From: Macrostomum lignano | Taxonomy: Eukaryota | Assembly: GCA_002269645.1 (NCBI GenBank) | Contig: NIVC01000110.1 | Coordinates: 434,001 to 498,000, forward strand | Direction: 5' to 3' | Length of the DNA stretch: 64,000 nucleotides | Shown: positions 40,194 through 60,349 of the stretch, piece after piece | Layout of the letters: every line of letters begins with the position of its first letter | Position numbering within the stretch: the first letter of the stretch is position 1 | Notes under the pieces: generated by a model | What the model saw: the letters and a program-made list of their open reading frames with translations, nothing else | Told to the model about the DNA's origin: nothing | Databases searched by the model: none | Translations under genes and position numbers: made by a program

Positions 40194-41834
40194 AAAAGAA
40201 ATATAGTACAAAAGAAGAAAAACTTTTACAACAAATGAAAATTTGCGCCATATTCACGACATACTACCCCTAGTAAGCAAGTTGGTACAGTACAGCACGG
40301 AACGCATTCGCGGAAAGCAAAATTCAAAATTCAAGAACAAGAGCAATATAACAAGGGTATAACTATAGCAACAGGGAAAAAAACGCAATGGGAACACAAC
40401 GTAATTCACTACGCAAAACATGACACGACAATGGAACGCAAGCAAGAACACAAATACAATTCTATGACACGGCAAAACGCAATCAAATACATAAGCAAAG
40501 CTACTATTCAATACGCGACACGACAAAACACAAGCAAAAAAATAAATAAATCGAAACAAATCGCGACAGAACGCAACGTTTACGCAAACTATGGCACGAC
40601 TTTCTACAATCGAAAACTTAAAGCAAAACGCATGCTACCCATCACCAAGAACAAATAGCGCGTTGACGCATTTTACACAAGTTAATTAAATTACTCCTTC
40701 ACGACGTGCTAAGATGAACCTTATCGGCTGGCAAAATTTTATTACTCGCTGATTTAACTATCCGCACCTCCCCCCTCCTAAAAAGGTAGGGTGGGCGCTA
40801 CGACCCTCGCTGTCTCCACAGCGGAATTCTTATCGCAATTTACCACGACGCTTATCTCTAATTGGATGCCTCGACGATAATTAACTCACGCCCACGCTCC
40901 CGTGGCGTTCCATCCACTCAGCGAAGTCTATCGCCCATTGGCTGCAGTTTATGGTCTTGCCCAGGACCAATCCCCCTGGCGAAATTCACCGCCCAATGGC
41001 TGCAGTTTTCTGTCGTGCCCAGGACAAGGGCTCCTTTCTCGCACTTCAGTCGTCTTGTGGTTGCTTCTTTTGGTAATTTCTCTTCCTACGGCTGCAGTTT
41101 AACGTCGTGCCCAGACGCTTGCTTAGTTAGTTTCTCTCCTAGCGGTTGCAGTTTAACGTCGTGCCCAGGACGCCGGCTCTAGTGAACTTCCTTTCCAGCG
41201 GCTGCAGTTTAACGTCGTGCCCAGGACGCTTCAGACATTTCTAGCTGCAACATGTGACATGTCGATCAGCTGTAAGTTAGACTTATTTTTGCGTCAAGCA
41301 GTGTTCTGACTCAAGCAATTTGAATTATATTTTTGTGTTGTTTTTATGATGCTTTTACAATTTTTATGTTTTTATCGAATATTCACGCATGTCAGTTCTA
41401 CTGCAAGACTGTTTTTAATAATTTTAATAATAATATTTATTCCTTAATAATTTTCCCATAATAATAATTCCGGATATACTGGCCGATGGAACCGCAGACG
41501 ACTTCAATCTGGGCTCAATTCAATTCCAATTTCTATTTGCAACTTCCAATCGTTTCATATCTTCTATGGTCGTCTATGGTATTTCTCTTTCATTAGCGTC
41601 CTGGAATCTACCAGGTGTGGCAGCTCGAGCAGTTCGTCTTCAACTCCTGCAACTGCAGTGTCAACATCAGCACTTCCAAGTCTTTATTATTTCCAATTTC
41701 TAATTTCTATTGACTATTTTTCTCCGGTTCCATTTTCGTGCAACAAATTTCTCGCGTTTGTCTCGACAAGTTACTATTAGTAATACAATTGAAATTTTTC
41801 GTCTCGACAGTACTTTCGTTTCTATAGACTCTAT

Positions 41835-44800
41835 TCAATGATAACCGTATCGTTCCGGGGGTCTAATCGCCGCGCGGTTCCGCAGCCGCGGTATCCAGCT
41901 AACGTTATTCGTGCCTGCCCGCTGCGGGGGCGTACTGTGCACTGGGCTCAGATGCATTAAATTCGGTGGAGTGCGCACAGGAATCTGCCTGGCCTGAGAC
42001 CCCGCAGGACTCGCCTGCGCCCGCTGGTTTGCATTGGCCGCTGTCTGAGTATTTTCGACTGCTCTATTCATATTACTTTCAGTAGCTTCGTGAGCTCTCT
42101 CACGTTGCAAAAATCTAATTCTCTCTGGTCTCTGAATCTCCACTTGAACTCTTTCTGACTCCTCCGAGCCGTCATCACTAGCACTTCCAGCTTCCTCTTC
42201 TCGATATTGACGCAACTTTTCTTCTGACAAGTAGCAGGGCTTTGTTCTGTCTACTGTCACTACGTCATGAATTCTGGCGGGTTGCTCTATTCGGTCAACC
42301 TTCGGACCGGGCTCGATTTTTAAATTTTTTCCATTATTTCTTACTTCAAGCACTCGATACGGACCTACCCACTTCCTATTCGTATCATAACAATTCTGCG
42401 TATTCGCTATCCAGACCAGGTCACCTGGCTGATAATACTGCTGGAATACTTTCGTGTCATAATTAGATTTCTGCCGCCTGACTGATATTTGCTGCTTTTC
42501 TCTGGCGATTCTATACGATTCCATGCACTTCTTATACAGATCATGTAAATGTTTATCACGGGTCTTGCGCTCCGGTGCAGGCAATCCGAGCTCAGCATCA
42601 ACCGGTAGCCGCATCTTTCGACCATAGACTAATTCGAACGGACTAAATTTATTGCTTTCACTGACCGTGCTTCGCTGAACCATCAAAGCGTGCGGAAGCA
42701 CCTCATCCCATGCCAAACTGAGTTCACTCTGGCTAATCTGATTCCATCTTTCACTACTCTGACCATGCGCTCGCAGCGACCGTTAGCTTGCGGATGGTAG
42801 CTAGTAGTATGGCGCAAATCTATTCGGAAATTTTCGGTTAACGATTTCACTAATTCTGCAGTAAACGATGTACCTCTGTCTGATATGAACGCTTCAGGGG
42901 CACCATGCCGAGTGATCCACTTTGTGTACAGGGCCCAAGCTGTACTCTCAGCTGTACAATCTCGAAGCGCTTTTACCTCTAGCCAGCCCGTAAAGTGATC
43001 AACCATCAGCAGGAGGTACTTGTTCCCCCGTGCTGTGGCGTTGAACGGACCGGCGAAATCTATATGTACTTTCTCGCCCATGTAACTGCTGACTTCTGGT
43101 TCTAAGGGCGCTCGTGGCTTCGGCCCGTATTTCTTCTTGTCTGGCACTCAGTACAAGTCTTAATATATCTATCTAAGTTTGTTGAATAGTTTGGCCACCA
43201 AAATCTCTGTCGAATCAAATCTTTAGTCTTCGAAATACCGCCGTGAGCCATTTGATCGTGGTAAGCTCTAAACAACTGCTGCTCCAGGGCTTGGTTTTCC
43301 GGCAGTACTGTCTGCTCAAATTTTCGGCCTTCGAATCTGTCCAGATTCTATGAATTATGTCATTTTTCACTAATAGCTGCTCATAATCGCTAAATAATGA
43401 CTTATAACTGCGGCTCATTCCAACCCATTCATTCTTGGGCGGACAGGGCTCTCCCTGTCTGAGCTTTTGCTTGAGCAGCAGCAACTCTGGCTGGCTCTCC
43501 TGCAGTTCTACAATTCCCGCTGGCGTATCGATATTAATTGCACCGCAGTGGACTGTTGCTGTCTTCGTCGCACTGCAAGTGGGGCATTCCTCATGGTAGC
43601 GTTTCGGGGGACCATCCCGCTGAGGTCTGCGACTCAGGGCGTCTGCGTTACCATGGGCAATCCCTTGGCGGTACTGAATTGCAAAGTCATATTCTTCCAT
43701 TCTCGAAATTACTTCAAATTGATCAAACTGCTCAAGAATCATGTTCCATCTGCCTAGCATGCCTTTTGCACCGTGGCACTTACGCAGCCATTGGAGGGCC
43801 GCGTGGTCTGTCCTGACCTTGAAACGACGGCCGACCAGATAAGGCCGGTAATGTTCTAAGAAATATATCAGCGCAAACATTTCCTTCATCGTAGTGCAGT
43901 AATTCAACTGATGCTCATTTAACGGATGCGAAGCATAGGCTATTACTTTTTCTTCCCCATCTTGCTCTTGTAATAAATTTCCACCTATAGCTACGTCACA
44001 GGCGTCGACATCGAGGATGAACGGTCCCGCGTCGCTATCGAACCTGGGGTAGCTCAGTACAGGTGCGCTTACTAACTTCTGCTTTAAAAGATCGAATGCC
44101 TTCTGGCAACTGTCATCCCACTTATACTTGACATCTTTTCTAGTTAAATTATTTAGGGGCTCACTTATTCGCGCAAAGTCTTTAATAAATCTGCGATAGT
44201 AGCCGGCTAAGCCTAAGAATCCGCGCAGCTCAGAGATATTCTCTGGCCGGGGCCATGTCTGGACTTTTTCTATCTTATCTTTGCTGGTATAAATACCGTG
44301 CTGGCAGACGGTGTGCCCTAGGAAGGTGACTTCTTTCCGAAACAGAAAGGTCTTCTCTGGCTTGATTTTCATTCCAGCATCTGCTAATCGAGAGAAAATT
44401 AATTCCAAATTACTGAGCATTTCTTCGAAATTCTTGCCTGTGCAAATAACATCATCTAGGTAGAGTAAAGCGAACTTATAAGCGTAATCGCCTAAGATCT
44501 TCTGCATTATGCGCTGAAAGCAAGCGGGTCCATTCGTGACTCCGAAAGGCAAAACTTTCCACTGGAACAGGCCATCATGGGTTCGAAACGCTAATTTCTC
44601 GCGGTCAGTCTCTCTGACCTTCACTGACCAATAAGCGCCGACCATGTCTAGGGTGCTAAAGTACATGTTGCCTGCCAGGGATTCCAGCGATTCTTGAATT
44701 AGCGGTAACGGAAAACTGTCCTTCTTAGTCTTATTATTTAGTTGTCTAAAATCACAGCAAAATCTGAATTCTCCGGACTTCTTCCGGGCGAGAACTATAG

Positions 44801-46610
44801 GGCAACTCCACTCAGATTCTGAGGGCTCAATCAAATCGTGCTCTAATAGCTGCTGCACATGCCCGCTAACAAATTCTCGTTGCTCAGGGCTTTGCTTGCG
44901 CAGGGGAATTCTGACTGGAATTTCATCGGTAGTCTCGATCTTGAATTCGCCCATCTGGGTCTTGCCGATATCCCACTGATCCTTCGACACAATATTCTGA
45001 TAACGATTAAGAATTCAATTACTTTTGCCTTCTGAGCTTCACTTAAATCGGTCTCGTTTAAGCGGAATTGCTTTCTAATTCTTTCTGCTTCTTGCATCGT
45101 GACTGCTGCCTTCGATTGCTTCTGCGCACCTACTTCTAAATCAGTTTCTGACATTGCGAAAAGTTCTACATCCTCCTTCAGCGGTTGATACTGCGCCACT
45201 ATCTCATCCTTATGAATTGTCTGAGCCTCTTCTGTCAGGTTCATTAATCTAACGTAAGTTTCGCCGAATTCGTCTAATCTAGTAATAGCTTTGCTACTAA
45301 TGGCTCATCTTTCTCGCTAATTTGACTGCGGCCTGAAATGAAGCCGAGTTCTGCAGTTTCCGGAGTATCTTTACATTTAGCCTTGACATAAATTTCGCTC
45401 ATCGGTGCTATAGATACTTTCTTGACTACTTGCAGTAGGACGCAACGCGTTTCATCACTCGTTGTTACAAGCGGAATTCTGCGATCACTAAATTCTAAGG
45501 ATTTTCCTGCTATATCTAATTTAATTTTATGCCGAGTTAACAAGTCGATGCCTATTATTGATGATGTTAGTAAGCCTTCAGCAACATAGAATGGGTGCGT
45601 AATCTCGCAGTCCCCGAATCTGACGCGCAATGCTACTTGGCCTAGTAAATTTGAAGTTTGGCCATTGGCGGATCGCATATTCACTGAGCATGGCTTCAGA
45701 CTATGATTTGCCGGATAGAGGCGTTGATATAATTTCTTATCGATTAGGCAATTTGAGGCGCCGGTGTCAACTAATATTTTTTCACTTAATCCGTTAATCT
45801 GGCTATCGAGGAATAATCCTGAATTCACTAATTGGCTAGATATGTCTGCTTCTACGGTCTTCTCTCGCTTCTCTGTTGCTTTCTTTTCAGCTGCCACATC
45901 TCGCTGGATGGCTGTCTCTAACTTCCTTAATTCTTGCTTCATTTCCCTAAGTTCAGCTCTAAGTTCTGCTGTCGTGGCACTCTTGTCAGGTTCTTCTTTC
46001 GTTGATTCTTCTTGGACTTTTTCTACCAAGCATTGGCGCAAGTCCTTCAATTCGGTTCTTAGATCTGATAATTCTTTTACTACCTTAGATTCGTCTGCTG
46101 AAGCTTTCTGTCCTTCCACCTCACTGAGTCTCAAGTCTATGCTATTCAATGCGCTTCTCTGAGCTGCCGCAGCTTCGCTTCGCTTCTCTAATTCTTCTTT
46201 CAATTGCTCTGACTGTCTAGCTAAGCTCGCTGACTTCTGTTTGTTAATTTCTGCTAATCTGCGTTCCTCGCTTGAGCAAATTTTACATTGACCGCTCTCT
46301 GTTTCCTACTATGAGTAGTATCGTTAGTGCGGATAAATTTTACTGTCGCCCTCTGGCGCAGAAAATGCATAATTTCGTAATCAGTTGCTATATTAGTATT
46401 AGTCACATGAAAGAATATATCTCTATTATTGCTATCTCGCAGGAATCCGTAGCCTCTGTAATAATTATACCAAACTAAATTTCCATATTCTACATTGACT
46501 GAGCTGTCTTGCTGGTCCTCTACTGCTGCAGCTCTTCTATTGGGAGTGAATCGGTTTAGTGGCTGGGGGCGGTTGGCCCTCCCTTGGTGCCGCCCCGTCG
46601 GTAGTTTAAA
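41835..46610 (-). CDS. pol: Pol, copy A (CSD - coiled coil - protease - RT - RNase H - integrase), with six 1-bp deletions relative to copy B
   Basis: LVDTGAS, LPFGVTNGPACFQ, YLDDV, DACDVAIGG, HHCC, VHIDFAGP/SDRG/CERM, KWVGPY. Deletions near 46281, 45291, 45007, 43333, 43136, 42733. Confidence 0.92.
46542..46610 (-). promoter_or_regulatory. -1 programmed ribosomal frameshift signal (U UUA AAC + predicted H-type pseudoknot); copy B at 55868-55936
   Basis: In-frame slippery heptamer TTTAAAC, 7-nt spacer, stem GGGGCGG/CCGCCCC, loop GGGAG complementary to a downstream CTCCC. The -1 frame is stop-free and continuous with Pol. Confidence 0.85.
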
Positions 46611-47791
46611 GAATTTCGTCTAACTGGGCAGTCTCTGGCCAGGTGAGTTTCTTCGCCGCACTCATAACAGGCCTTTCTCGCATTTGGCGCGTTCGCCCCC
46701 GAAGGTTTGAACCTGTCATTGGCCCCTCCGGCCTCGTGACCAAAGCGTGGCGGGCGTGTCATGGCGGGCCTGACAAATGGCGAAGACTGACGATTATAGG
46801 GTCTTGAGTAGCTGCTCATGTGATGCTGTGGCCGAAAGCTATTCGGAGGCTGCACTGGTGCCTGTGGCCTATAGCTTGGGTTCATTTGTCTATGGGCAAA
46901 CCTGGGTTGCCATTGCCTGTAGTCGAACTGAGGCTGATAATTCTGGTACGGTTGGTACTGCGAAGGATAATTGCTCGGGGAAGCAAACTGAGGTCCAAAT
47001 GACTGGTGGCCTTGGCCCGCGCTGGGTGCTGCTACAGGCGTCTGTTCCTTCCCTACTTGAGCCGTTAACGTATTCGAGCCCTCTTGCTTCCTTCTACTCT
47101 TTTGGCTACCTGGGTTTGCGAGTTCTTCGAGGATCTCCTCGTTCTTAGCTGCAGTCAATAAATCTTGAGTCTGATACTTCGATTCATGGGTTCTACGATA
47201 GGCAATAACTGCGCGCCTGACTTTATAATTTGCTATGCCGGCTTCAAATCGTTCAGAAACTCGCTCTCGAGCCTGATTCTCTAGTCCTGCTTTCCTAACT
47301 AATTCAACTAATGCGTCGTAAAATTCTTCTAACGATTCGTCTTCCTTCTGCCTGCGGTTCATCAGCTCTAGCTTCGCTTCTTCTTTCTGTCCTACGGGCT
47401 TAAATTTGTCCTTTAAAGTCTTTTCGATGCTTTCGAAAGATTCGGTGCTCGCTAGGCCTAAGTTAATGTAAACCTTATAGGCGTCTTCGTCTAGGAGCGA
47501 CAATAGCTGATACACTTTGGCCGATTCATCTATACCGTTGCCTTGACAGTAGTTGTTGAAGATTCTTAGAAACAATTCGAAATCTGAGCCAAGTCGGTAT
47601 GGCTTTGGCTTTGCTACGCTGTTATGCGACTTCAAAATCACTCTAGGTTCGGGATTTTCGGTTTCCATTCTTCTTATGCGGTCCTGCAGTTCTCTCACTA
47701 CTGTTCTCAAATGTTCGGCCTCATCTACTTCGCCTTCGTTCCTAATCTCAGCTGACTTCGATTCCTGACTATTTTCTCCGTCTTGCGCCAT
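46556..47791 (-). CDS. gag: Gag, copy A, intact 411 aa with one CCHC zinc knuckle
   Basis: Open ORF; CYECGEETHLARDC; capsid-like QKEDESLEEFYDAL; Q/P-rich linker. Confidence 0.93.
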   Translation of the reverse strand: MAQDGENSQESKSAEIRNEGEVDEAEHLRTVVRELQDRIRRMETENPEPRVILKSHNSVAKPKPYRLGSDFELFLRIFNNYCQGNGIDESAKVYQLLSLLDEDAYKVYINLGLASTESFESIEKTLKDKFKPVGQKEEAKLELMNRRQKEDESLEEFYDALVELVRKAGLENQARERVSERFEAGIANYKVRRAVIAYRRTHESKYQTQDLLTAAKNEEILEELANPGSQKSRRKQEGSNTLTAQVGKEQTPVAAPSAGQGHQSFGPQFASPSNYPSQYQPYQNYQPQFDYRQWQPRFAHRQMNPSYRPQAPVQPPNSFRPQHHMSSYSRPYNRQSSPFVRPAMTRPPRFGHEAGGANDRFKPSGANAPNARKACYECGEETHLARDCPVRRNSLNYRRGGTKGGPTAPSH

Positions 47792-48301
47792 GCTAAGTTT
47801 TAATCAATTGGAATTTCTATTACTGCAACTTCAGAAAGTACAACTTGTAAAGCTATAACAATTTCAATGATCTAGCTTTCTATTTTATCTTATGAGCGGA
47901 ATCGGTCGCCTCGCTCGCACTGGCAATAACTGATAAGAAAAACTGAATGTACACTGAGACAAATTCAACCAATGTACTCTCTAGTGCGCGCACTCGCAGA
48001 CTATGCTGATAAACACTAATAAAATTTTCAACTGTAAACAAAATCTACTTTCACACGCAAGTTTCTATTAAAGTGCTAATTTGAGTTTAGAAAGTCAATT
48101 TTATTTTTCCCACTCCTAAATCCTATTCAGTATTTTGGGGTAACTGGCCAACCGCAAAACCACACCTAATGCGGAATTGCTGCACACTGCGTGGTTGACG
48201 AAATAGCCGCTACGAGCCTGGAACAGACTCGTTGAATTTTAGTCTAAGCTTGCTCACTTAGAGCGCCTACCAATAAACTGCCGCCTGCTAACTATTTATT
48301 G

Positions 48302-48318
48302 GATTCCCAGGGGCTCCA
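48302..48318 (-). promoter_or_regulatory. Primer-binding site TGGAGCCCCTGGGAATC; copy B at 57627-57643
   Basis: Starts 2 nt after the 5' LTR with TGG; its complement reads like a tRNA T-arm/acceptor 3' strand. Confidence 0.8.
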
Positions 48319-48320
48319 CT

Positions 48321-49502
48321 TGTGATAAATAGGCAATTAGATAATAGCATGCACGGTGAGCAATTATTTAGGCCCTAGACAAACCTACTTGGAGCGTTCG
48401 GAGATTTTAAAGCTATTAATCCTAATCGCCTATCGCCGGTCGGCGAGTCCTACCAGTCTTTCTCCAATAGCCGCAGGTACAGTACAAGAAAATAAAGAAC
48501 ACGAGGGAACACGAACCGAAAGATTTAGAGAGTGATAATCCTATTTCAAGAATAACTAACTTGATTGACGGTTTAATTTGATTAGCTGAGTTACAAGATT
48601 TGACAAACGGCGCAGATAACTAGAGTTGACAAAACGACAACAACGGTTAATAAATAATGATTATATACGCACTGACAAGCGGATCTCAGCTGAAGAAGAA
48701 GGAGGAGAAGGCACCGAACACAGGACCACGGAGAAAGACTCCTAACCCCTGGCCTAAGCCAGAACCTACACTCAAACGAGAGCCCTGCCGAACCGACCGT
48801 TCAACGGAGTACCGACTAAATTCTATCGGCACTGCCCTTCAGTGTAACACTGAGGCCCTCGGGGTCGAGGCCGCGTACTTGATCAGATCCGACAGTCTCT
48901 ATCTAACCGCGCTTGATAGCGACGACTTCAGACAGAAATTTGCCGTAGACGTTACGCCACAAGACTAAGCGGTTGGGCGGGAACAAAGAAATGGACCGGG
49001 GGTGATGAATTCAGGCGCCTCAAAGCGCGAACCAACAAGAGAAGGGAAAACGGCCACCGGCCGGGAACTGGACAAGACAAACCGGGGAAAAGGAGCAAGC
49101 GAGATCCGATTGCCAAAACACACTCTCATATATAGTCAGAGTCACAACCCCTCAAAACCCCCTCAAGCCGGGTGGTGGTCGTCTGGCCGGCCGCTTGCTT
49201 AAGCCGAATCGCACTGTGCCCGCGGCGCCGGGTAAAATTGAAACTTGCCGCGTGCCAGGGTCCAGGCCGGTTCTGATTGGCTGACCGCGCAAAGCTGGGG
49301 TTCGCAGACAAACTCAACCCTCCGCTGAGTCACAAAATGCGTCTGACTTCTAACCTGTTTACGCAAAATTGATTCCAACTAACAAGGAAAAAGTACACCA
49401 AAAACGTATGACTAAACTAAAGCAAAATAACAATTCAATAACAATATAGAAACTAATGCAGTCAATTTACAACAAAATATACGCAAAGATGCTCACACTA
49501 CA
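48321..49502 (-). repeat. Shared middle LTR, 1182 bp
   Basis: Same sequence as the other two LTRs; flanked by a PBS on one side and a PPT on the other. Confidence 0.96.
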
Positions 49503-51155
49503 CTTCCCCCTCCTAAAAGAAATATAGTACAAAAGAAGAAAAACTTTTACAACAAATGAAAATTTGCGCCATATTCACGACATACTACCCCTAGTAAGCA
49601 AGTTGGTACAGTACAGCACGGAACGCATTCGCGGAAAGCAAAATTCAAAATTCAAGAACAAGAGCAATATAACAAGGGTATAACTATAGCAACAGGGAAA
49701 AAAACGCAATGGGAACACAACGTAATTCACTACGCAAAACATGACACGACAATGGAACGCAAGCAAGAACACAAATACAATTCTATGACACGGCAAAACG
49801 CAATCAAATACATAAGCAAAGCTACTATTCAATACGCGACACGACAAAACACAAGCAAATCAATAAATAAATCGAAACAAATCGCGACAGAACGCAACGT
49901 TTACGCAAACTATGGCACGACTTTCTACAATCGAAAACTTAAAGCAAAACGCATGCTACCCATCACCAAGAACAAATAGCGCGTTGACGCATTTTACACA
50001 AGTTAATTAAATTACTCCTTCACGACGTGCTAAGATGAACCTTATCGGCTGGCAAAATTTTATTACTCGCTGATTTAACTATCCGCACCTCCCCCCTCCT
50101 AAAAAGGTAGGGTGGGCGCTACGACCCTCGCTGTCTCCACAGCGGAATTCTTATCGCAATTTACCACGACGCTTATCTCTAATTGGATGCCTCGACGATA
50201 ATTAACTCACGCCCACGCTCCCGTGGCGTTCCATCCACTCAGCGAAGTCTATCGCCCATTGGCTGCAGTTTATGGTCTTGCCCAGGACCAATCCCCCTGG
50301 CGAAATTCACCGCCCAATGGCTGCAGTTTTCTGTCGTGCCCAGGACAAGGGCTCCTTTCTCGCACTTCAGTCGTCTTGTGGTTGCTTCTTTTGGTAATTT
50401 CTCTTCCTACGGCTGCAGTTTAACGTCGTGCCCAGACGCTTGCTTAGTTAGTTTCTCTCCTAGCGGTTGCAGTTTAACGTCGTGCCCAGGACGCCGGCTC
50501 TAGTGAACTTCCTTTCCAGCGGCTGCAGTTTAACGTCGTGCCCAGGACGCTTCAGACATTTCTAGCTGCAACATGTGACATGTCGATCAGCTGTAAGTTA
50601 GACTTATTTTTGCGTCAAGCAGTGTTCTGACTCAAGCAATTTGAATTATATTTTTGTGTTGTTTTTATGATGCTTTTACAATTTTTATGTTTTTATCGAA
50701 TATTCACGCATGTCAGTTCTACTGCAAGACTGTTTTTAATAATTTTAATAATAATATTTATTCCTTAATAATTTTCCCATAATAATAATTCCGGATATAC
50801 TGGCCGATGGAACCGCAGACGACTTCAATCTGGGCTCAATTCAATTCCAATTTCTATTTGCAACTTCCAATCGTTTCATATCTTCTATGGTCGTCTATGG
50901 TATTTCTCTTTCATTAGCGTCCTGGAATCTACCAGGTGTGGCAGCTCGAGCAGTTCGTCTTCAACTCCTGCAACTGCAGTGTCAACATCAGCACTTCCAA
51001 GTCTTTATTATTTCCAATTTCTAATTTCTATTGACTATTTTTCTCCGGTTCCATTTTCGTGCAACAAATTTCTCGCGTTTGTCTCGACAAGTTACTATTA
51101 GTAATACAATTGAAATTTTTCGTCTCGACAGTACTTTCGTTTCTATAGACTCTAT

Positions 51156-54100
51156 TCAATGATAACCGTATCGTTCCGGGGGTCTAATCGCCGCGCGGTT
51201 CCGCAGCCGCGGTATCCAGCTAACGTTATTCGTGCCTGCCCGCTGCGGGGGCGTACTGTGCACTGGGCTCAGATGCATTAAATTCGGTGGAGTGCGCACA
51301 GGAATCTGCCTGGCCTGAGACCCCGCAGGACTCGCCTGCGCCCGCTGGTTTGCATTGGCCGCTGTCTGAGTATTTTCGACTGCTCTATTCATATTACTTT
51401 CAGTAGCTTCGTGAGCTCTCTCACGTTGCAAAAATCTAATTCTCTCTGGTCTCTGAATCTCCACTTGAACTCTTTCTGACTCCTCCGAGCCGTCATCACT
51501 AGCACTTCCAGCTTCCTCTTCTCGATATTGACGCAACTTTTCTTCTGACAAGTAGCAGGGCTTTGTTCTGTCTACTGTCACTACGTCATGAATTCTGGCG
51601 GGTTGCTCTATTCGGTCAACCTTCGGACCGGGCTCGATTTTTAAATTTTTTCCATTATTTCTTACTTCAAGCACTCGATACGGACCTACCCACTTCCTAT
51701 TCGTATCATAACAATTCTGCGTATTCGCTATCCAGACCAGGTCACCTGGCTGATAATACTGCTGGAATACTTTCGTGTCATAATTAGATTTCTGCCGCCT
51801 GACTGATATTTGCTGCTTTTCTCTGGCGATTCTATACGATTCCATGCACTTCTTATACAGATCATGTAAATGTTTATCACGGGTCTTGCGCTCCGGTGCA
51901 GGCAATCCGAGCTCAGCATCAACCGGTAGCCGCATCTTTCGACCATAGACTAATTCGAACGGACTAAATTTATTGCTTTCACTGACCGTGCTTCGCTGAA
52001 CCATCAAAGCGTGCGGAAGCACCTCATCCCATGCCAAACTGAGTTCACTCTGGGCTAATCTGATTCCATCTTTCACTACTCTGACCATGCGCTCGCAGCG
52101 ACCGTTAGCTTGCGGATGGTAGCTAGTAGTATGGCGCAAATCTATTCGGAAATTTTCGGTTAACGATTTCACTAATTCTGCAGTAAACGATGTACCTCTG
52201 TCTGATATGAACGCTTCAGGGGCACCATGCCGAGTGATCCACTTTGTGTACAGGGCCCAAGCTGTACTCTCAGCTGTACAATCTCGAAGCGCTTTTACCT
52301 CTAGCCAGCCCGTAAAGTGATCAACCATCAGCAGGAGGTACTTGTTCCCCCGTGCTGTGGCGTTGAACGGACCGGCGAAATCTATATGTACTTTCTCGCC
52401 CATGTAACTGCTGACTTCTGGTTCTAAGGGCGCTCGTGGCTTCGGCCCGTATTTCTTCCTTGTCTGGCACTCAGTACAAGTCTTAATATATCTATCTAAG
52501 TTTGTTGAATAGTTTGGCCACCAAAATCTCTGTCGAATCAAATCTTTAGTCTTCGAAATACCGCCGTGAGCCATTTGATCGTGGTAAGCTCTAAACAACT
52601 GCTGCTCCAGGGCTTGGTTTTCCGGCAGTACTGTCTGCTCAAATTTTCGGCCTTCTGAATCTGTCCAGATTCTATGAATTATGTCATTTTTCACTAATAG
52701 CTGCTCATAATCGCTAAATAATGACTTATAACTGCGGCTCATTCCAACCCATTCATTCTTGGGCGGACAGGGCTCTCCCTGTCTGAGCTTTTGCTTGAGC
52801 AGCAGCAACTCTGGCTGGCTCTCCTGCAGTTCTACAATTCCCGCTGGCGTATCGATATTAATTGCACCGCAGTGGACTGTTGCTGTCTTCGTCGCACTGC
52901 AAGTGGGGCATTCCTCATGGTAGCGTTTCGGGGGACCATCCCGCTGAGGTCTGCGACTCAGGGCGTCTGCGTTACCATGGGCAATCCCTTGGCGGTACTG
53001 AATTGCAAAGTCATATTCTTCCATTCTCGAAATTACTTCAAATTGATCAAACTGCTCAAGAATCATGTTCCATCTGCCTAGCATGCCTTTTGCACCGTGG
53101 CACTTACGCAGCCATTGGAGGGCCGCGTGGTCTGTCCTGACCTTGAAACGACGGCCGACCAGATAAGGCCGGTAATGTTCTAAGAAATATATCAGCGCAA
53201 ACATTTCCTTCATCGTAGTGCAGTAATTCAACTGATGCTCATTTAACGGATGCGAAGCATAGGCTATTACTTTTTCTTCCCCATCTTGCTCTTGTAATAA
53301 ATTTCCACCTATAGCTACGTCACAGGCGTCGACATCGAGGATGAACGATCCCGCGTCGCTATCGAACCTGGGGTAGCTCAGTACAGGTGCGCTTACTAAC
53401 TTCTGCTTTAAAAGATCGAATGCCTTCTGGCAACTGTCATCCCACTTATACTTGACATCTTTTCTAGTTAAATTATTTAGGGGCTCACTTATTCGCGCAA
53501 AGTCTTTAATAAATCTGCGATAGTAGCCGGCTAAGCCTAAGAATCCGCGCAGCTCAGAGATATTCTCTGGCCGGGGCCATGTCTGGACTTTTTCTATCTT
53601 ATCTTTGCTGGTATAATACCGTGCTGGCAGACGGTGTGCCCTAGGAAGGTGACTTCTTTCCGAAACAGAAAGGTCTTCTCTGGCTTGATTTTCATTCCAG
53701 CATCTGCTAATCGAGAGAAAATTAATTCCAAATTACTGAGCATTTCTTCGAAATTCTTGCCTGTGCAAATAACATCATCTAGGTAGAGTAAAGCGAACTT
53801 ATAAGCGTAATCGCCTAAGATCTTCTGCATTATGCGCTGAAAGCAAGCGGGTCCATTCGTGACTCCGAAAGGCAAAACTTTCCACTGGAACAGGCCATCA
53901 TGGGTTCGAAACGCTAATTTCTCGCGGTCAGTCTCTCTGACCTTCACTGACCAATAAGCGCCGACCATGTCTAGGGTGCTAAAGTACATGTTGCCTGCCA
54001 GGGATTCCAGCGATTCTTGAATTAGCGGTAACGGAAAACTGTCCTTCTTAGTCTTATTATTTAGTTGTCTAAAATCACAGCAAAATCTGAATTCTCCGGA

Positions 54101-55936
54101 CTTCTTCCGGGCGAGAACTATAGGGCAACTCCACTCAGATTCTGAGGGCTCAATCAAATCGTGCTCTAATAGCTGCTGCACATGCCCGCTAACAAATTCT
54201 CGTTGCTCAGGGCTTTGCTTGCGCAGGGGAATTCTGACTGGAATTTCATCGGTAGTCTCGATCTTGAATTCGCCCATCTGGGTCTTGCCGATATCCCACT
54301 GATCCTTCGACACAATATTCTGATAACGATTTAAGAATTCAATTACTTTTGCCTTCTGAGCTTCACTTAAATCGGTCTCGTTTAAGCGGAATTGCTTTCT
54401 AATTCTTTCTGCTTCTTGCATCGTGACTGCTGCCTTCGATTGCTTCTGCGCACCTACTTCTAAATCAGTTTCTGACATTGCGAAAAGTTCTACATCCTCC
54501 TTCAGCGGTTGATACTGCGCCACTATCTCATCCTTATGAATTGTCTGAGCCTCTTCTGTCAGGTTCATTAATCTAACGTAAGTTTCGCCGAATTCGTCTA
54601 ATCTAGTAATAGCTTTTGCTACTAATGGCTCATCTTTCTCGCTAATTTGACTGCGGCCTGAAATGAAGCCGAGTTCTGCAGTTTCCGGAGTATCTTTACA
54701 TTTAGCCTTGACATAAATTTCGCTCATCGGTGCTATAGATACTTTCTTGACTACTTGCAGTAGGACGCAACGCGTTTCATCACTCGTTGTTACAAGCGGA
54801 ATTCTGCGATCACTAAATTCTAAGGATTTTCCTGCTATATCTAATTTAATTTTATGCCGAGTTAACAAGTCGATGCCTATTATTGATGATGTTAGTAAGC
54901 CTTCAGCAACATAGAATGGGTGCGTAATCTCGCAGTCCCCGAATCTGACGCGCAATGCTACTTGGCCTAGTAAATTTGAAGTTTGGCCATTGGCGGATCG
55001 CATATTCACTGAGCATGGCTTCAGACTATGATTTGCCGGATAGAGGCGTTGATATAATTTCTTATCGATTAGGCAATTTGAGGCGCCGGTGTCAACTAAT
55101 ATTTTTTCACTTAATCCGTTAATCTGGCTATCGAGGAATAATCCTGAATTCACTAATTGGCTAGATATGTCTGCTTCTACGGTCTTCTCTCGCTTCTCTG
55201 TTGCTTTCTTTTCAGCTGCCACATCTCGCTGGATGGCTGTCTCTAACTTCCTTAATTCTTGCTTCATTTCCCTAACTTCAGCTCTAAGTTCTGCTGTCGT
55301 GGCACTCTTGTCAGGTTCTTCTTTCGTTGATTCTTCTTGGACTTTTTCTACCAAGCATTGGCGCAAGTCCTTCAATTCGGTTCTTAGATCTGATAATTCT
55401 TTTACTACCTTAGATTCGTCTGCTGAAGCTTTCTGTCCTTCCACCTCACTGAGTCTCAAGTCTATGCTATTCAATGCGCTTCTCTGAGCTGCCGCAGCTT
55501 CGCTTCGCTTCTCTAATTCTTCTTTCAATTGCTCTGACTGTCTAGCTAAGCTCGCTGACTTCTGTTTGTTAATTTCTGCTAATCTGCGTTCCTCGCTTGA
55601 GCAAATTTTTACATTGACCGCTCTCTGTTTCCTACTATGAGTAGTATCGTTAGTGCGGATAAATTTTACTGTCGCCCTCTGGCGCAGAAAATGCATAATT
55701 TCGTAATCAGTTGCTATATTAGTATTAGTCACATGAAAGAATATATCTCTATTATTGCTATCTCGCAGGAATCCGTAGCCTCTGTAATAATTATACCAAA
55801 CTAAATTTCCATATTCTACATTGACTGAGCTGTCTTGCTGGTCCTCTACTGCTGCAGCTCTTCTATTGGGAGTGAATCGGTTTAGTGGCTGGGGGCGGTT
55901 GGCCCTCCCTTGGTGCCGCCCCGTCGGTAGTTTAAA
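51156..55936 (-). CDS. pol: Pol, copy B, about 1590 aa, with one 1-bp deletion near 53615
   Basis: Same domains as copy A; open from the slippery site through CSD, coiled coil, PR and RT to about 53615, then RH-INT to TGA at 51156. Confidence 0.93.
55601..55813 (-). other. Cold-shock domain at the N-terminus of Pol (copy B intact; copy A 46280-46487)
   Basis: YGNLVWYNYYRGYGFLRDSNNRDIFFHVTNTNIATDYEIMHFLRQRATVKFIRTNDTTHSRKQRAVNVKIC matches the CSD pattern GxVKWFNxxKGYGFI...DVFVH...L...VxF...AxNV. Confidence 0.82.
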
Positions 55937-57116
55937 GAATTTCGTCTAACTGGGCAGTCTCTGGCCAGGTGAGTTTCTTCGCCGCACTCATAACAGGCCT
56001 TTCTCGCATTTGGCGCGTTCGCCCCGAAGGTTTGAACCTGTCATTGGCCCCTCCGGCCTCGTGACCAAAGCGTGGCGGGCGTGTCATGGCGGGCCTGACA
56101 AATGGCGAAGACTGACGATTATAGGGTCTTGAGTAGCTGCTCATGTGATGCTGTGGCCGAAAGCTATTCGGAGGCTGCACTGGTGCCTGTGGCCTATAGC
56201 TTGGGTTCATTTGTCTATGGGCAAACCTGGGTTGCCATTGCCTGTAGTCGAACTGAGGCTGATAATTCTGGTACGGTTGGTACTGCGAAGGATAATTGCT
56301 CGGGGAAGCAAACTGAGGTCCAAATGACTGGTGGCCTTGGCCCGCGCTGGGTGCTGCTACAGGCGTCTGTTCCTTCCCTACTTGAGCCGTTAACGTATTC
56401 GAGCCCTCTTGCTTCCTTCTACTCTTTTGGCTACCTGGGTTTGCGAGTTCTTCGAGGATCTCCTCGTTCTTAGCTGCAGTCAATAAATCTTGAGTCTGAT
56501 ACTTCGATTCATGGGTTCTACGATAGGCAATAACTGCGCGCCTGACTTTATAATTTGCTATGCCGGCTTCAAATCGTTCAGAAACTCGCTCTCGAGCCTG
56601 ATTCTCTAGTCCTGCTTTCCTAACTAATTCAACTAATGCGTCGTAAAATTCTTCTAACGATTCGTCTTCCTTCTGCCTGCGGTTCATCAGCTCTAGCTTC
56701 GCTTCTTCTTTCTGTCCTACGGGCTTAAATTTGTCCTTTAAAGTCTTTTCGATGCTTTCGAAAGATTCGGTGCTCGCTAGGCCTAAGTTAATGTAAACCT
56801 TATAGGCGTCTTCGTCTAGGAGCGACAATAGCTGATACACTTTGGCCGATTCATCTATACCGTTGCCTTGACAGTAGTTGTTGAAGATTCTTAGAAACAA
56901 TTCGAAATCTGAGCCAAGTCGGTATGGCTTTGGCTTTGCTACGCTGTTATGCGACTTCAAAATCACTCTAGGTTCGGGATTTTCGGTTTCCATTCTTCTT
57001 ATGCGGTCCTGCAGTTCTCTCACTACTGTTCTCAAATGTTCGGCCTCATCTACTTCGCCTTCGTTCCTAATCTCAGCTGACTTCGATTCCTGACTATTTT
57101 CTCCGTCTTGCGCCAT
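55882..57116 (-). CDS. gag: Gag, copy B, with a 1-bp deletion near 56025 just before the zinc knuckle
   Basis: Matches copy A except gttcgccccgaag vs gttcgcccccgaag. Confidence 0.9.
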
Positions 57117-57645
57117 GCTAAGTTTTAATCAATTGGAATTTCTATTACTGCAACTTCAGAAAGTACAACTTGTAAAGCTATAACAATTTCAATGATCTAG
57201 CTTTCTATTTTATCTTATGAGCGGAATCGGTCGCCTCGCTCGCACTGGCAATAACTGATAAGAAAAACTGAATGTACACTGAGACAAATTCAACCAATGT
57301 ACTCTCTAGTGCGCGCACTCGCAGACTATGCTGATAAACACTAATAAAATTTTCAACTGTAAACAAAATCTACTTTCACACGCAAGTTTCTATTAAAGTG
57401 CTAATTTGAGTTTAGAAAGTCAATTTTATTTTTCCCACTCCTAAATCCTATTCAGTATTTTGGGGTAACTGGCCAACCGCAAAACCACACCTAATGCGGA
57501 ATTGCTGCACACTGCGTGGTTGACGAAATAGCCGCTACGAGCCTGGAACAGACTCGTTGAATTTTAGTCTAAGCTTGCTCACTTAGAGCGCCTACCAATA
57601 AACTGCCGCCTGCTAACTATTTATTGGATTCCCAGGGGCTCCACT

Positions 57646-58827
57646 TGTGATAAATAGGCAATTAGATAATAGCATGCACGGTGAGCAATTATTTAGGCCC
57701 TAGACAAACCTACTTGGAGCGTTCGGAGATTTTAAAGCTATTAATCCTAATCGCCTATCGCCGGTCGGCGAGTCCTACCAGTCTTTCTCCAATAGCCGCA
57801 GGTACAGTACAAGAAAATAAAGAACACGAGGGAACACGAACCGAAAGATTTAGAGAGTGATAATCCTATTTCAAGAATAACTAACTTGATTGACGGTTTA
57901 ATTTGATTAGCTGAGTTACAAGATTTGACAAACGGCGCAGATAACTAGAGTTGACAAAACGACAACAACGGTTAATAAATAATGATTATATACGCACTGA
58001 CAAGCGGATCTCAGCTGAAGAAGAAGGAGGAGAAGGCACCGAACACAGGACCACGGAGAAAGACTCCTAACCCCTGGCCTAAGCCAGAACCTACACTCAA
58101 ACGAGAGCCCTGCCGAACCGACCGTTCAACGGAGTACCGACTAAATTCTATCGGCACTGCCCTTCAGTGTAACACTGAGGCCCTCGGGGTCGAGGCCGCG
58201 TACTTGATCAGATCCGACAGTCTCTATCTAACCGCGCTTGATAGCGACGACTTCAGACAGAAATTTGCCGTAGACGTTACGCCACAAGACTAAGCGGTTG
58301 GGCGGGAACAAAGAAATGGACCGGGGGTGATGAATTCAGGCGCCTCAAAGCGCGAACCAACAAGAGAAGGGAAAACGGCCACCGGCCGGGAACTGGACAA
58401 GACAAACCGGGGAAAAGGAGCAAGCGAGATCCGATTGCCAAAACACACTCTCATATATAGTCAGAGTCACAACCCCTCAAAACCCCCTCAAGCCGGGTGG
58501 TGGTCGTCTGGCCGGCCGCTTGCTTAAGCCGAATCGCACTGTGCCCGCGGCGCCGGGTAAAATTGAAACTTGCCGCGTGCCAGGGTCCAGGCCGGTTCTG
58601 ATTGGCTGACCGCGCAAAGCTGGGGTTCGCAGACAAACTCAACCCTCCGCTGAGTCACAAAATGCGTCTGACTTCTAACCTGTTTACGCAAAATTGATTC
58701 CAACTAACAAGGAAAAAGTACACCAAAAACGTATGACTAAACTAAAGCAAAATAACAATTCAATAACAATATAGAAACTAATGCAGTCAATTTACAACAA
58801 AATATACGCAAAGATGCTCACACTACA
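57646..58827 (-). repeat. LTR (5' LTR of copy B), 1182 bp
   Basis: Same sequence; ends at the TSD. Confidence 0.96.
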
Positions 58828-59640
58828 CTTGGGTGAGCACCCCTGTCTCTTGGGTGGGCACCTTGTCTCTTGGTGGGTGCCCCTGTCTCTTGGTGGGTGC
58901 CCCTGTCTCTTGGTGGGCGCCCGTCTCTTGGTGGGCGCCCCTGTCTCTTCATGGGCGCCCCTGTCTCTTGGTGGGCGCCCCTGTCTCTTGGTGGGCGCCC
59001 TGTCTCTTGGGTGGGCACCTTGTCTCTTGGTGGGCACCCCTGTCTCTTGGTGGGCGCCCCTGTCTCTTGGTGGGCGCCCCTGTCTCTTAAGTGGGCGCCC
59101 CTGTCTCTTGGGTGGGCACCTTGTCTCTTGGTGGGCGTCCCTGTCTCTTGGTGGGCGCCCCTGTCTCTTGGGTGAGCACCCCTGTCTCTTGGGTGGGCAC
59201 CTTGTCTCTTGGTGGGTGCCCCTGTCTCTTGGTGGGTGCCCCTGTCTCTTGGTGGGCGCCCGTCTCTTGGTGGGCGCCCCTGTCTCTTCATGGGCGCCCC
59301 TGTCTCTTGGTGGGCGCCCCTGTCTCTTGGTGGGTGCCCCTGTCTCTTGGTGGGCGCCCGTGTCTCATGGTGCAGGGTACCCCTGTCTCATGGTGCAGGG
59401 TACCCCTGTCTCATGGATCAGGGTACCCCTGTATCATGGTGCAGGGTACCCCTGTCTCATGGATCAGGGTACCCCTGTATCACGGTGCAGGGTACCCCTG
59501 TCTCATGGTGCAGGGTACCCCTGTCTCATGGTGCAGGGTACCCCTGTCTCATGGTGAGCGCCCCTGTCTCATGGTGAGCGCCCCTGTCTCATGGTGGGTG
59601 CCCCTGTCTCTTGGTGGGCGCCCCTGTCTCTTTATGGATG
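58828..59640. repeat. GC-rich minisatellite, right arm
   Basis: Same unit as 37444-38999, drifting to ggtgcagggtacccctgtctcat. Confidence 0.96.
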
Positions 59641-60349
59641 CCCCTTTCTCTTTGTTACCTACTTAGCTGCTCTCTAAGTTAGGTAGTTTGGCTACAAGTT
59701 TACTTACGTGGTGGTGTCGTATGTTTTGCATTATTGTCCAAAAATTGTTAAAAAGCCGTTTTATCGTATAAAATATGATAAGTAAGTTCAGATTTAAAAC
59801 GAAACTCATAGTCTTATAGAGTCCCTAATAACATACTGCATAACTCCTTCTGTGTTAGTTCCGTGTGCGTGTACGGTTTTTCATTGCTGAAGTGATGACA
59901 AGGGTAACAAGGTACTCGTACCAGTGTACCAGTGATATGCACTGGCTAAAATTAGAAAAATGTACGATATTGTTTAACTAGCGTAGTGTATGGAAAAATG
60001 CTACTGTACACTGAGACATAACTCATAATAGACACACGATGCAGCGGCTCTTGTACTAAAGAGCTAGAAAATATGAATGCTTCGTTCCTTCTAATAGGAT
60101 TATTTGTTTATAAATTTAATTATAGCCATGTGAAAATACAACAGGCGTGAATACATGCTTTCAGCTTTAGAAAAAAGCCAGGAAAAGGGGGGGGTGGCTA
60201 AACAAACCTCTTATTTTGGCAAAATGCAAAATTCAACAAAGTCAAGTGAGCACTTTACCGTACGAGCTACGTCTAAAACGAGTCAACGGTGTACGTTAGA
60301 GACAAGTGGAACCTTTCCATTTATCACCTGCGTGAGATGGGCTGCCTTT

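What the first reader, a model, noticed from the sequence alone, without database searches (positions are those of the whole stretch)
55601..55813. Ty3/Gypsy Pol begins with a cold-shock (RNA chaperone) domain
Seen: the Pol frame is stop-free from the frameshift site (55936) and encodes, before the protease, YGNLVWYNYYRGYGFLRDSNNRDIFFHVT...L...VKF...RAVNVKI. The ORF track starts at 55732 and hides most of it. Known: CSDs carry RNP1 (KGFGFI) and RNP2 (VFVH) aromatic motifs that bind and melt ssRNA/ssDNA; RGYGFL and DIFFHV sit here at the right spacing. Standard Ty3/Gypsy Pol starts with the protease, and I know of no CSD described there. Inference: a captured CSD acts as a nucleic-acid chaperone for packaging, tRNA annealing or strand transfer, or counters small-RNA silencing. 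In Gag-Pol it follows the single CCHC knuckle, giving a Lin28-like CSD+CCHC pairing in reverse order, made only upon frameshifting. Also present in copy A (46280-46487).
Basis: partly seen in the sequence, partly recalled or inferred. Interest (0 to 1): 0.93.

Follow-up and report, generated by a model that had tools for sequence, protein, structure and literature searches.

The report
Cold-shock domain inside a flatworm retrotransposon Pol
A Ty3/Gypsy retrotransposon of the flatworm Macrostomum lignano carries a genuine cold-shock (single-strand RNA/DNA-binding) domain between its Gag zinc knuckle and its protease. It is made only when the ribosome frameshifts into Pol, and I found no published description of this accessory domain in LTR retroelements.

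Summary
On the minus strand, the pol frame is open from 55945. Residues 45-115 (window 55813-55601) match Pfam CSD PF00313 above its curated cut-off (32.5 bits, E 8e-8, 62 of 66 profile positions). All 39 PDB sequence hits are cold-shock or Y-box proteins. An alignment-based AlphaFold model (pLDDT 90) is a five-stranded barrel, and its 50 best Foldseek matches are all CSD structures.

The host is Macrostomum lignano. The two window copies form one tandem LTR-int-LTR-int-LTR array and are 99.9% identical, so copy A is not independent evidence. An independent insertion on another contig (L001) has an unbroken 1596-aa Pol frame: CSD, charged spacer, PR, RT, RNase H, IN. Its CSD dN/dS against the window copy is 0.07.

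A second lineage (L003, Pol 58% identical, metagenome contig) has the same gag, −1 frameshift, CSD, spacer, PR layout. More distant Pols lack the domain.

An in-phase UUUAAAC heptamer lies in the gag/pol overlap and no Met precedes the domain, so it can be made only as Gag-Pol.

Most likely it is a nucleic-acid-binding or chaperone module that supplements the single-knuckle nucleocapsid; this is inferred, not shown. No literature precedent was found. It is a new variant of a known kind.

The parts
39000..58827 (-). Tandem Ty3/Gypsy array: LTR - internal A - LTR - internal B - LTR
   Evidence: Self-BLAST gives a 10.5-kb direct repeat at 99.88% identity and a third LTR copy. The ends were read directly.
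57646..58827 (-). 5' LTR of copy B (1182 bp, TG...CA)
48321..49502 (-). Shared middle LTR (3' LTR of copy B and 5' LTR of copy A)
39000..40181 (-). 3' LTR of copy A
58828..58831 (-). Target-site duplication CAAG, upstream copy. The partner lies at 38996-38999.
   Evidence: Read from the flanks. The same 4 bases border the whole array.
38996..38999 (-). Target-site duplication CAAG, downstream copy
57626..57645 (-). Candidate primer-binding site (TGG... starting 2 nt after the LTR)
   Evidence: Sequence read. It was not matched to a tRNA; the window has no tRNA gene.
49503..49514 (-). Polypurine tract AGGAGGGGGAAG abutting the LTR (also at 40182-40193)
55882..57116 (-). gag of copy B (capsid-like Retrotrans_gag, Q/Y/P-rich region, one CCHC knuckle); broken as assembled by 1 frameshift
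55930..55936 (-). -1 frameshift slippery heptamer U UUA AAC, in phase with the gag frame (copy B)
55892..55922 (-). Predicted 7-bp G/C stem-loop, 7 nt downstream of the heptamer
   Evidence: The position and spacer are canonical, but the folding energy is no better than shuffles (z 0.12).
51156..55945 (-). pol of copy B (linker, CSD, charged spacer, PR, RT, RNase H, IN); broken as assembled by 3 frameshifts, with no premature stops
55814..55945 (-). Transframe linker before the CSD (44 aa, 8 K/R against 4 D/E, no Met)
55601..55813 (-). Cold-shock domain of copy B (the finding)
   Evidence: Pfam PF00313 32.5 bits, E 8e-8; PDB hits; AF2 pLDDT 90 with five strands; Foldseek top 50 all CSDs
55151..55600 (-). 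Charged spacer of about 150 aa (67% E/K/R/Q/L/A, 1% P+G), probably helical or coiled coil
   Evidence: Composition; no Pfam family. The structure was not predicted.
54857..55132 (-). Retropepsin-type aspartic protease (DTGAS)
   Evidence: PF13975 E 5e-11 and PF13650
53630..54109 (-). Reverse transcriptase core
   Evidence: PF00078 E 1e-33
52113..52616 (-). Integrase zinc-binding and catalytic core domains
   Evidence: PF17921 E 5e-18 and PF00665 E 2e-8
46556..47791 (-). gag of copy A, intact (411 aa; Retrotrans_gag plus one zf-CCHC)
46604..46610 (-). Slippery heptamer of copy A
41835..46619 (-). pol of copy A; broken as assembled by 8 frameshifts, with no premature stops
46275..46487 (-). Cold-shock domain segment of copy A (tandem twin of the copy B segment)
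   Evidence: tblastn, 95.7% identity over 92 aa
37441..38999 (.). 20-bp-unit satellite array into which the element inserted (one side)
58840..59652 (.). The same 20-bp satellite on the other side of the element

Best explanation
A lineage of Ty3/Gypsy LTR retrotransposons, in Macrostomum lignano and at least one related environmental lineage, acquired a cold-shock domain plus a charged helical spacer in the transframe region of Pol, between the frameshift site and the protease.

Shown:
- The segment is a bona fide CSD, an OB-fold with RNP1- and RNP2-like aromatic motifs.
- It lies in frame with PR-RT-RH-IN.
- No Met precedes it in the pol frame, so it can only be translated as part of Gag-Pol.
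- Canonical, in-phase slippery heptamers sit in the gag/pol overlap: UUUAAAC here and GGGAAAC in the other lineage.
- It is under purifying selection and is retained in two lineages whose Pols are only 58% identical.

Inferred:
- In Gag-Pol the domain sits about 50 residues after the single CCHC knuckle and extends the nucleocapsid into a two-module single-strand nucleic-acid binder.
- It emerges from the ribosome immediately after the frameshift. It could therefore tether Gag-Pol to the very RNA that encodes it (cis capture for packaging).
- Inside the particle it could act as a duplex-melting or annealing chaperone next to RT, for primer placement and strand transfers.
- The charged spacer probably dimerises. 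That would raise the avidity of the CSD and bring two protease monomers together.
- The protease may later release the CSD and spacer as a separate small protein.
For: Domain identity:
- Pfam CSD scores above its gathering cut-off.
- All 39 PDB sequence hits are Csp or Y-box proteins.
- 99 of the 100 nearest proteins in 1.84 billion representatives are CSD proteins.
- The segment aligns end to end with canonical CSDs and has the near-invariant G, G, F, H and A columns.
- The AF2 model has pLDDT 90.2 and five strands. The Foldseek top 50 are all CSD structures, with TM 0.6-0.84.

Context:
- The heptamer is in phase, and a 7-bp GC stem follows after a 7-nt spacer.
- The first Met of the pol frame is at residue 84, inside the domain.
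- Gag has one CCHC.

Selection and retention:
- An independent insertion, L001, has an unbroken 1596-aa Pol frame that includes the CSD.
- CSD dN/dS between L001 and copy B is 0.066 (2 nonsynonymous and 7 synonymous changes; binomial P 3.7e-4), against 0.23 for the first 783 Pol codons.
- L003 has the same gag(CCHC), -1 frameshift, CSD, spacer, PR, RT, RH, IN layout, with Pol 58% and CSD 38% identical.
- The residues invariant in the three-sequence CSD alignment (window, L003, L001) include the beta1 Trp, the YGF of RNP1 and the IFFH of RNP2.

Background: single-strand binding and melting by CSDs is established knowledge of the family. The host CSD protein YB-1 is a reported cofactor of HIV-1 RNA metabolism and early replication steps (PMC6040738).
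Against: - No biochemical, expression or proteomic data were available. Which replication step, if any, the domain serves is pure inference.
- The selection test rests on 9 substitutions between two copies.
- The CSD of L003 scores below Pfam's cut-off (21 bits, N-terminal half only). The C-terminal half is therefore evolving fast.
- The AF2 model used an alignment made of known CSDs and so leans toward that fold. The single-sequence model was poor (pLDDT 57).
- The downstream stem-loop is not more stable than shuffled sequence.
- Only two lineages were found, one of them a single 6.5-kb metagenome contig whose protease is itself interrupted.
- Both window copies are broken as assembled.
Confidence: 0.5

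Rival explanations
1. Host-factor mimicry. The element encodes its own Y-box-like domain to coat and stabilise its mRNA/genomic RNA, to control its translation, or to route Gag-Pol to RNA granules. The effect would be outside the particle, not on reverse transcription.
For: The fold and sequence resemble YB-1 and YBX2 CSDs about as well as bacterial Csps. Host YB-1 supports HIV-1 RNA metabolism and virion production (PMC6040738). A charged region follows the CSD, as in Y-box proteins.
Against: The domain is made only in the minor frameshift product. That is poor stoichiometry for coating mRNA. It is fused next to the nucleocapsid and protease, which favours a role in the particle. No data are available on localisation.
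Confidence: 0.2
2. Passenger. The CSD is a recently captured host gene fragment carried along without function.
For: Accessory captures do occur in LTR elements (PMC6338049). Only two lineages carry the domain. Its C-terminal half diverges quickly.
Against: dN/dS is 0.066 in the CSD against 0.23 for the first 783 Pol codons. The domain is retained, at the same position and with the canonical binding-face residues invariant, in lineages with only 58% Pol identity. An intact 1596-aa frame exists.
Confidence: 0.08
3. Regulator of its own frameshifting or translation. The CSD binds single-stranded RNA near the slippery site and tunes the Gag:Gag-Pol ratio.
For: The domain is encoded immediately downstream of the frameshift signal and appears right after the shift.
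Against: No sequence or structure evidence points to a specific binding site. The downstream stem is not statistically notable. The two lineages use different heptamers and different downstream sequence.
Confidence: 0.05
4. Counter-defence. The domain sequesters small RNAs or shields the transcript from piRNA/siRNA silencing.
For: None beyond the general ability of CSDs to bind single-stranded RNA.
Against: Stoichiometry is low because the domain exists only in the frameshift product. It has no similarity to known silencing suppressors in any search.
Confidence: 0.04
5. Artefact: a chance motif match or an assembly chimera.
For: The assembly shows many one-base indels between the twin copies.
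Against: The match is above Pfam's curated cut-off and is reciprocal. The same architecture is seen in three M. lignano copies at two loci and in an unrelated metagenome contig.
Confidence: 0.01

Closest known systems
Cold-shock domain proteins (bacterial CspA/CspB; eukaryotic YB-1/YBX2, CRHSP-24, Unr/CSDE1, Lin28)
   Same: Same Pfam family and fold. RNP1-like GYGF and RNP2-like IFFH lie on strands 2 and 3, a Trp on strand 1 and an '...AVNV...' strand 5. The length is about 70 aa.
   Different: The domain is embedded in a retroelement Gag-Pol polyprotein rather than a cellular RNA-binding protein. Identity to any cellular CSD is only 18-38%. A helix is predicted in the strand 3-4 loop. The source lineage (bacterial or eukaryotic) is unresolved, because named near hits include both an actinobacterium and a plant.
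Canonical Ty3/Gypsy (Metaviridae) elements, including the other M. lignano families catalogued in PMC12801592
   Same: LTRs with TG...CA ends, a 4-bp target duplication, PBS and PPT. Gag has a capsid domain and CCHC. Pol order is PR-RT-RH-IN, and gag and pol are joined by a -1 frameshift.
   Different: About 270 residues (linker, CSD, charged spacer) lie between the frameshift site and the protease, where related elements have almost nothing. In L002 the protease follows gag directly. L002 and L004-L006 have no CSD in any frame. P0001-P0010 list no PF00313.
Known accessory domains of LTR retrotransposon polyproteins (chromodomain, DnaQ-like exonuclease, as listed in PMC6338049)
   Same: A non-core domain fused in frame into the polyprotein of one sub-lineage.
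   Different: The accessory domains named in that review are not single-strand RNA chaperone folds, and the review does not mention a CSD. Here the insertion is at the N-terminus of Pol, adjacent to the nucleocapsid.
Lin28 and plant CSD-plus-zinc-knuckle proteins (CSD combined with CCHC)
   Same: One polypeptide combines a CSD with a retroviral-type CCHC knuckle.
   Different: The order is reversed (CCHC then CSD), with one knuckle and about 50 residues between them. The pairing exists only in the frameshift product. Lin28B CSD structures rank 29th and lower in the fold search. This is an analogy, not membership.
Host YB-1 as a retroviral cofactor
   Same: A CSD protein acting on retroviral RNA and early replication steps (PMC6040738).
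   Different: There the CSD protein is recruited from the host. Here the element encodes the domain itself.

Membership tests
Cold-shock domain (Pfam PF00313) | Sequence match to the family profile above the curated gathering score | tested here: met
   32.5 bits for the isolated segment and 27.2 bits in the long open stretch, against a cut-off of 27; profile positions 3-64 of 66. The L003 homologue scores 21 bits, below the cut-off.
Cold-shock domain (Pfam PF00313) | Five-stranded antiparallel beta-barrel (OB fold) | tested here: met
   The AF2 model built on a 29-sequence alignment has pLDDT 90.2 and strands at 3-12, 17-22, 27-31, 52-59 and 67-74. The Foldseek top 50 are all CSDs, with TM up to 0.84. 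Caveat: the alignment consisted of known CSDs, and the single-sequence model was poor.
Cold-shock domain (Pfam PF00313) | RNP1 and RNP2 aromatic/basic motifs on strands 2 and 3 | tested here: met
   GYGF and IFFH align with the near-invariant G, G, F and H columns of 28 other CSDs. They are invariant between the window lineage and L003.
Cold-shock domain (Pfam PF00313) | Binds and melts single-stranded RNA/DNA | not testable with these tools
   Biochemical property; inferred from family membership only.
Ty3/Gypsy (Metaviridae) LTR retrotransposon | Direct LTRs with TG...CA ends, short target-site duplication, PBS and PPT | tested here: met
   1182-bp LTRs at 99.9% identity, CAAG duplication, a TGG... 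site 2 nt after the LTR, and a purine tract before the LTR. The PBS was not matched to a tRNA.
Ty3/Gypsy (Metaviridae) LTR retrotransposon | Pol domain order PR-RT-RNase H-IN, and gag with a capsid domain and CCHC | tested here: met
   Pfam hits in that order, and an uninterrupted 1596-aa frame in L001. The clade within Ty3/Gypsy (Mag, Mdg3, etc.) was not determined.
Programmed -1 ribosomal frameshift signal | X XXY YYZ slippery heptamer in phase with the upstream frame, inside the overlap | tested here: met
   U UUA AAC at 55930-55936, and G GGA AAC in L003, both in phase.
Programmed -1 ribosomal frameshift signal | Stable downstream stem-loop or pseudoknot 5-9 nt after the heptamer | tested here: inconclusive
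   A 7-bp GC stem follows a 7-nt spacer, but the minimum free energy of -16.6 kcal/mol is no better than shuffles (z 0.12).
Programmed -1 ribosomal frameshift signal | Frameshifting actually occurs | not testable with these tools
   Needs ribosome profiling or peptide evidence.
Lin28-type CSD+CCHC proteins | N-terminal CSD followed by two CCHC knuckles in one cellular protein | tested here: not met
   One CCHC precedes the CSD, and only in the frameshift fusion. Lin28B CSD structures rank below Csp and Y-box CSDs.
Y-box proteins | CSD followed by a long C-terminal tail of alternating basic and acidic clusters, in a free-standing cellular protein | tested here: inconclusive
   A 150-aa region that is 42% charged follows the CSD, but it is part of a polyprotein and shows no detectable similarity to Y-box tails.

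The most novel reading that the evidence does not exclude
The CSD plus charged spacer is cut out of Gag-Pol by the element's protease as a distinct, dimeric particle protein. It takes over or augments the chaperone work normally done by the nucleocapsid. That would be an independent recruitment of an OB-fold RNA chaperone into retroelement replication, and the first retroelement that encodes, rather than borrows, a Y-box-type factor.
Probability: 0.3. Interest if true: 0.75.

Novelty: new variant of a known kind. Interest (0 to 1): 0.62.

Why it matters
LTR retroelements and retroviruses depend on nucleic-acid chaperones. The nucleocapsid zinc knuckle is the only widely known element-encoded one, and cellular CSD proteins such as YB-1 are recruited as cofactors.

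An element that has built a cold-shock domain into Gag-Pol, next to a minimal one-knuckle nucleocapsid, is a natural case of an alternative chaperone solution. It widens the short list of accessory domains known in LTR-element polyproteins.

It also exposes an annotation blind spot. The deposited M. lignano protein starts downstream of the domain. The only other example is filed in GenBank as a bacterial 'retropepsin-like aspartic protease' in a misbinned MAG. Frameshift-expressed N-terminal Pol regions are therefore systematically overlooked.

Tried and rejected
1. Word-indexed protein search with CSD-to-PR found nothing. It did not even return the 97%-identical P0001. Its 8000-candidate list was probably saturated by words from the low-complexity charged spacer, so this result is not evidence of absence.
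2. The same tool with the CSD alone found no candidate. The exhaustive representative search was needed.
3. The single-sequence AlphaFold model was poor (pLDDT 57). Its fold search was not significant, although Csps topped the list. It was replaced by the alignment-based model.
4. Scans of metagenome, genome (GTDB) and viral contig collections with CSD patterns found no further relative. Pol patterns gave only three distant Pols (31-41% identity) in metagenomes, all without a CSD, and none in GTDB genomes.
5. An exact look-up of the intact Gag of copy A in other assemblies found nothing on record.
6. The source of the CSD could not be resolved. The top cellular hits are mostly unnamed multi-CSD proteins, and the two named ones are an actinobacterium and a plant.
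7. Heat-shock elements were searched in the window because M. lignano LTR elements are reported to be heat-induced (PMC12801592). There were no perfect matches.
8. Copy A was rejected as corroboration, because it is a tandem twin.
9. The idea that L001 is the same locus in another haplotype was rejected, because its flanks share nothing with the window.
10. Supplementary tables of PMC12801592 were not held, so its domain annotations could not be checked.
Full report
**What is in the window.**
The finding lies on the minus strand inside a Ty3/Gypsy element that is present as a tandem array, LTR - internal A - LTR - internal B - LTR, at 39000-58827. The three 1182-bp LTRs are 99.9% identical and the two internal regions are 99.88% identical. 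The array is bordered on both sides by the same 4 bases (CAAG) and sits inside a 20-bp-unit satellite. The LTRs start with TG and end with CA. A TGG... site follows the 5' LTR and a purine tract precedes the 3' LTR.

**The observation.**
Translating the minus strand shows a frame that opens at 55945. It reads through a 44-residue basic linker, the quoted peptide (Y45 to I115, window 55813-55601), a ~150-residue charged spacer, a retropepsin and the RT core. The mechanical ORF list starts this frame at an internal GTG (55732), which hides the first half of the domain.
- Pfam places PF00313 (CSD) on residues 46-113. The score is 27.2 bits in the long stretch and 32.5 bits (E 8.2e-8) for the isolated segment. 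The curated cut-off is 27, and profile positions 3-64 of 66 are covered.
- Sequence search of the PDB returns 39 hits, all cold-shock or Y-box proteins.
- An exhaustive phmmer search of 1.84 billion representative proteins gives 100 hits at E<=1e-3, and 99 of them carry Pfam CSD.
- In an alignment with 28 of those domains, the window segment aligns end to end with few gaps. It has the near-invariant G, G, F, H and A columns, including GYGF (RNP1) and IFFH (RNP2).

**Fold.**
A single-sequence AlphaFold model was poor (pLDDT 57). Its fold search was not significant, though Csps topped the list. With the 29-sequence alignment the model reaches pLDDT 90.2 and pTM 0.76. It has five strands and one helix in the loop between strands 3 and 4. 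Its 50 best Foldseek matches in the PDB are all CSD structures (CspA, CspE, CspB, YB-1, YBX2, CRHSP-24, Unr, Lin28B), with probability 1.0 and TM 0.6-0.84. The caveat is that the alignment was made of known CSDs.

**How it is expressed.**
- Copy A has an intact 411-aa Gag with a capsid-like Retrotrans_gag domain, a long Q/Y/P-rich region and a single CCHC knuckle.
- The pol frame is -1 relative to gag and overlaps it by about 60 nt.
- In the overlap lies TTTAAAC (55930-55936 in copy B, 46604-46610 in copy A), in phase as U UUA AAC.
- Seven nucleotides downstream a 7-bp G/C stem is predicted, but the energy is no better than for shuffled sequence.
- The pol frame has no Met before residue 84, which is inside the domain.

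The CSD can therefore be made only as part of the Gag-Pol frameshift product, where it follows the knuckle by about 50 residues.

**State of the copies.**
The counts below are relative to the intact frames. Substitutions create no premature stop in any copy.

| Copy | gag | pol |
|---|---|---|
| A | intact | 8 frameshifts |
| B | 1 frameshift | 3 frameshifts |
| L001 | 3 frameshifts | intact |

The twins differ by 5 substitutions and 8 single-base indels, 6 of them in homopolymer runs. Many of these breaks may therefore be long-read assembly errors rather than biology.

**Host and independent copy.**
- The long open stretch is 97% identical to Macrostomum lignano protein BOX15_Mlig028235g4 (P0001). 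That annotated protein begins downstream of the CSD and lists no PF00313.
- Its contig (L001, NIVC01000738.1) carries an insertion with unrelated flanks and about 96% nucleotide identity to the window element.
- There the pol frame is open for 1596 codons without interruption: linker, CSD, spacer, PR, RT, RNase H, IN.
- Between L001 and copy B the CSD has 2 nonsynonymous and 7 synonymous changes. That gives dN/dS 0.066 and binomial P 3.7e-4 against neutrality.
- The comparable values are 0.23 for the first 783 codons and 0.45 for the linker just upstream.

**A second lineage.**
- Only one of the 100 CSD hits also has a protease. It is P0019 (234 aa, E 8e-8, 38% identical across the whole domain).
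- Its 6.5-kb metagenome contig (L003) is also deposited as part of a misbinned 'Kangiellaceae bacterium' MAG.
- L003 encodes Gag with two CCHC knuckles, then in the -1 frame a CSD, a shorter charged spacer and a protease, then RT-RH-IN.
- Its overlap contains an in-phase G GGA AAC heptamer.
- Its Pol is 58% identical to P0001 over 1145 residues.
- The residues invariant in the three-sequence alignment (window, L003, L001) include the strand-1 Trp, YGF and IFFH.
- The spacer is barely conserved and differs in length.
- The L003 CSD scores only 21 bits in Pfam, over its N-terminal half only.

**Relatives without the domain.**
- In the next-closest Pol found (L002, 33% identity), the protease gene starts 87 nt after the gag gene ends.
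- L002 and three metagenome relatives (L004-L006, 31-41% identity) have no CSD in any frame.
- None of P0001-P0010 lists PF00313.
- Pattern scans of metagenome, GTDB-genome and viral contig collections found no further carrier.

**Interpretation.**
What is shown is anatomy and constraint. A true CSD sits in frame in the transframe region. It is expressed only by frameshifting, is under purifying selection, and is retained in two lineages.

What is inferred is function. CSDs bind and melt single-stranded nucleic acid (established knowledge of the family). Retroelements need such chaperone activity for packaging, primer annealing and strand transfer. This Gag has only one knuckle. The most economical reading is that the domain extends the nucleocapsid of Gag-Pol into a two-module binder. 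The charged spacer probably gives dimerisation. My confidence in this reading is about 0.5.

The rivals, in order of confidence:
- A Y-box-like role on the element's mRNA outside the particle. Its plausibility comes from the reported dependence of HIV-1 on host YB-1 (PMC6040738).
- A functionless passenger.
- Self-regulation of frameshifting.
- Counter-silencing.

**Comparison and novelty.**
The segment meets the sequence, fold and motif criteria of the CSD family, and the element meets the criteria of Ty3/Gypsy. The Lin28 comparison fails as membership because the order is reversed and there is one knuckle; it remains only an analogy.

Full-text searches found no report of such a domain in a retroelement. 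The searches combined cold-shock domain with LTR retrotransposon, Gypsy, Ty3, Gag-Pol or accessory domain. A review of accessory domains names the chromodomain and a DnaQ-like exonuclease and does not mention a CSD. The recent catalogue of 137 M. lignano LTR families does not mention one in its main text. Repbase, Dfam, GyDB and InterPro architectures could not be consulted.

I rate this a new variant of a known kind. The finding is real, apparently undescribed and mechanistically suggestive, but its function is untested and its known distribution is narrow.

Noticed in passing
window 39000-58827: The element is a tandem LTR-int-LTR-int-LTR array sharing the middle LTR and bordered by one CAAG duplication. 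The two units differ by only 5 substitutions and 8 one-base indels, 6 of them in homopolymer runs. This pattern looks like long-read assembly error.
   Followed up: partly
window 37441-38999 and 58840-59652: The array is inserted in a 20-bp-unit satellite that continues on both sides. The whole window is unusually rich in short-unit tandem arrays (35 TRF rows). Several of them generate long spurious ORFs, for example at 12694-13625, 21337-22485 and 25322-26454.
   Followed up: partly
window 55990-56330 (gag, minus strand): Between the capsid-like domain and the CCHC knuckle, Gag has a ~100-residue Q/Y/P/S-rich low-complexity region that looks prion-like. It might drive condensate formation.
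   Followed up: no
L003 (JGI 3300040801 contig; NCBI MEE4247031.1/MEE4247032.1): A eukaryotic Ty3/Gypsy contig is deposited as part of a 'Kangiellaceae bacterium' MAG. Its CSD-protease ORF is named 'retropepsin-like aspartic protease'. This is a misbinning or contamination case.
   Followed up: partly
L001 10001-14113 (P0001, BOX15_Mlig028235g4): The deposited M. lignano gene model starts at an internal Met of Pol. It therefore omits the CSD and part of the charged spacer, although the frame is open for 226 further codons upstream.
   Followed up: yes
window 63003-63935 (-), 60353-61852 (-), 3479-4204 (+), 7726-8415 (-): Neighbouring ORFs look like host genes or exons: an ankyrin-repeat protein (E 5e-93), a weak Mab-21 C-terminal domain match (below cut-off), a filamin repeat (E 1.5e-20) and a GNAT acetyltransferase.
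   Followed up: no
window 41075-41231 and 50396-50552: A 56-bp unit repeated 2.8 times lies between the end of pol and the 3' LTR of each unit.
   Followed up: no
window 55860-55936 (-): The loop of the predicted stem downstream of the slippery site contains GGGAG, and CUCCC lies about 15 nt after the stem. An H-type pseudoknot is therefore possible. The same bases are present in L001.
   Followed up: no
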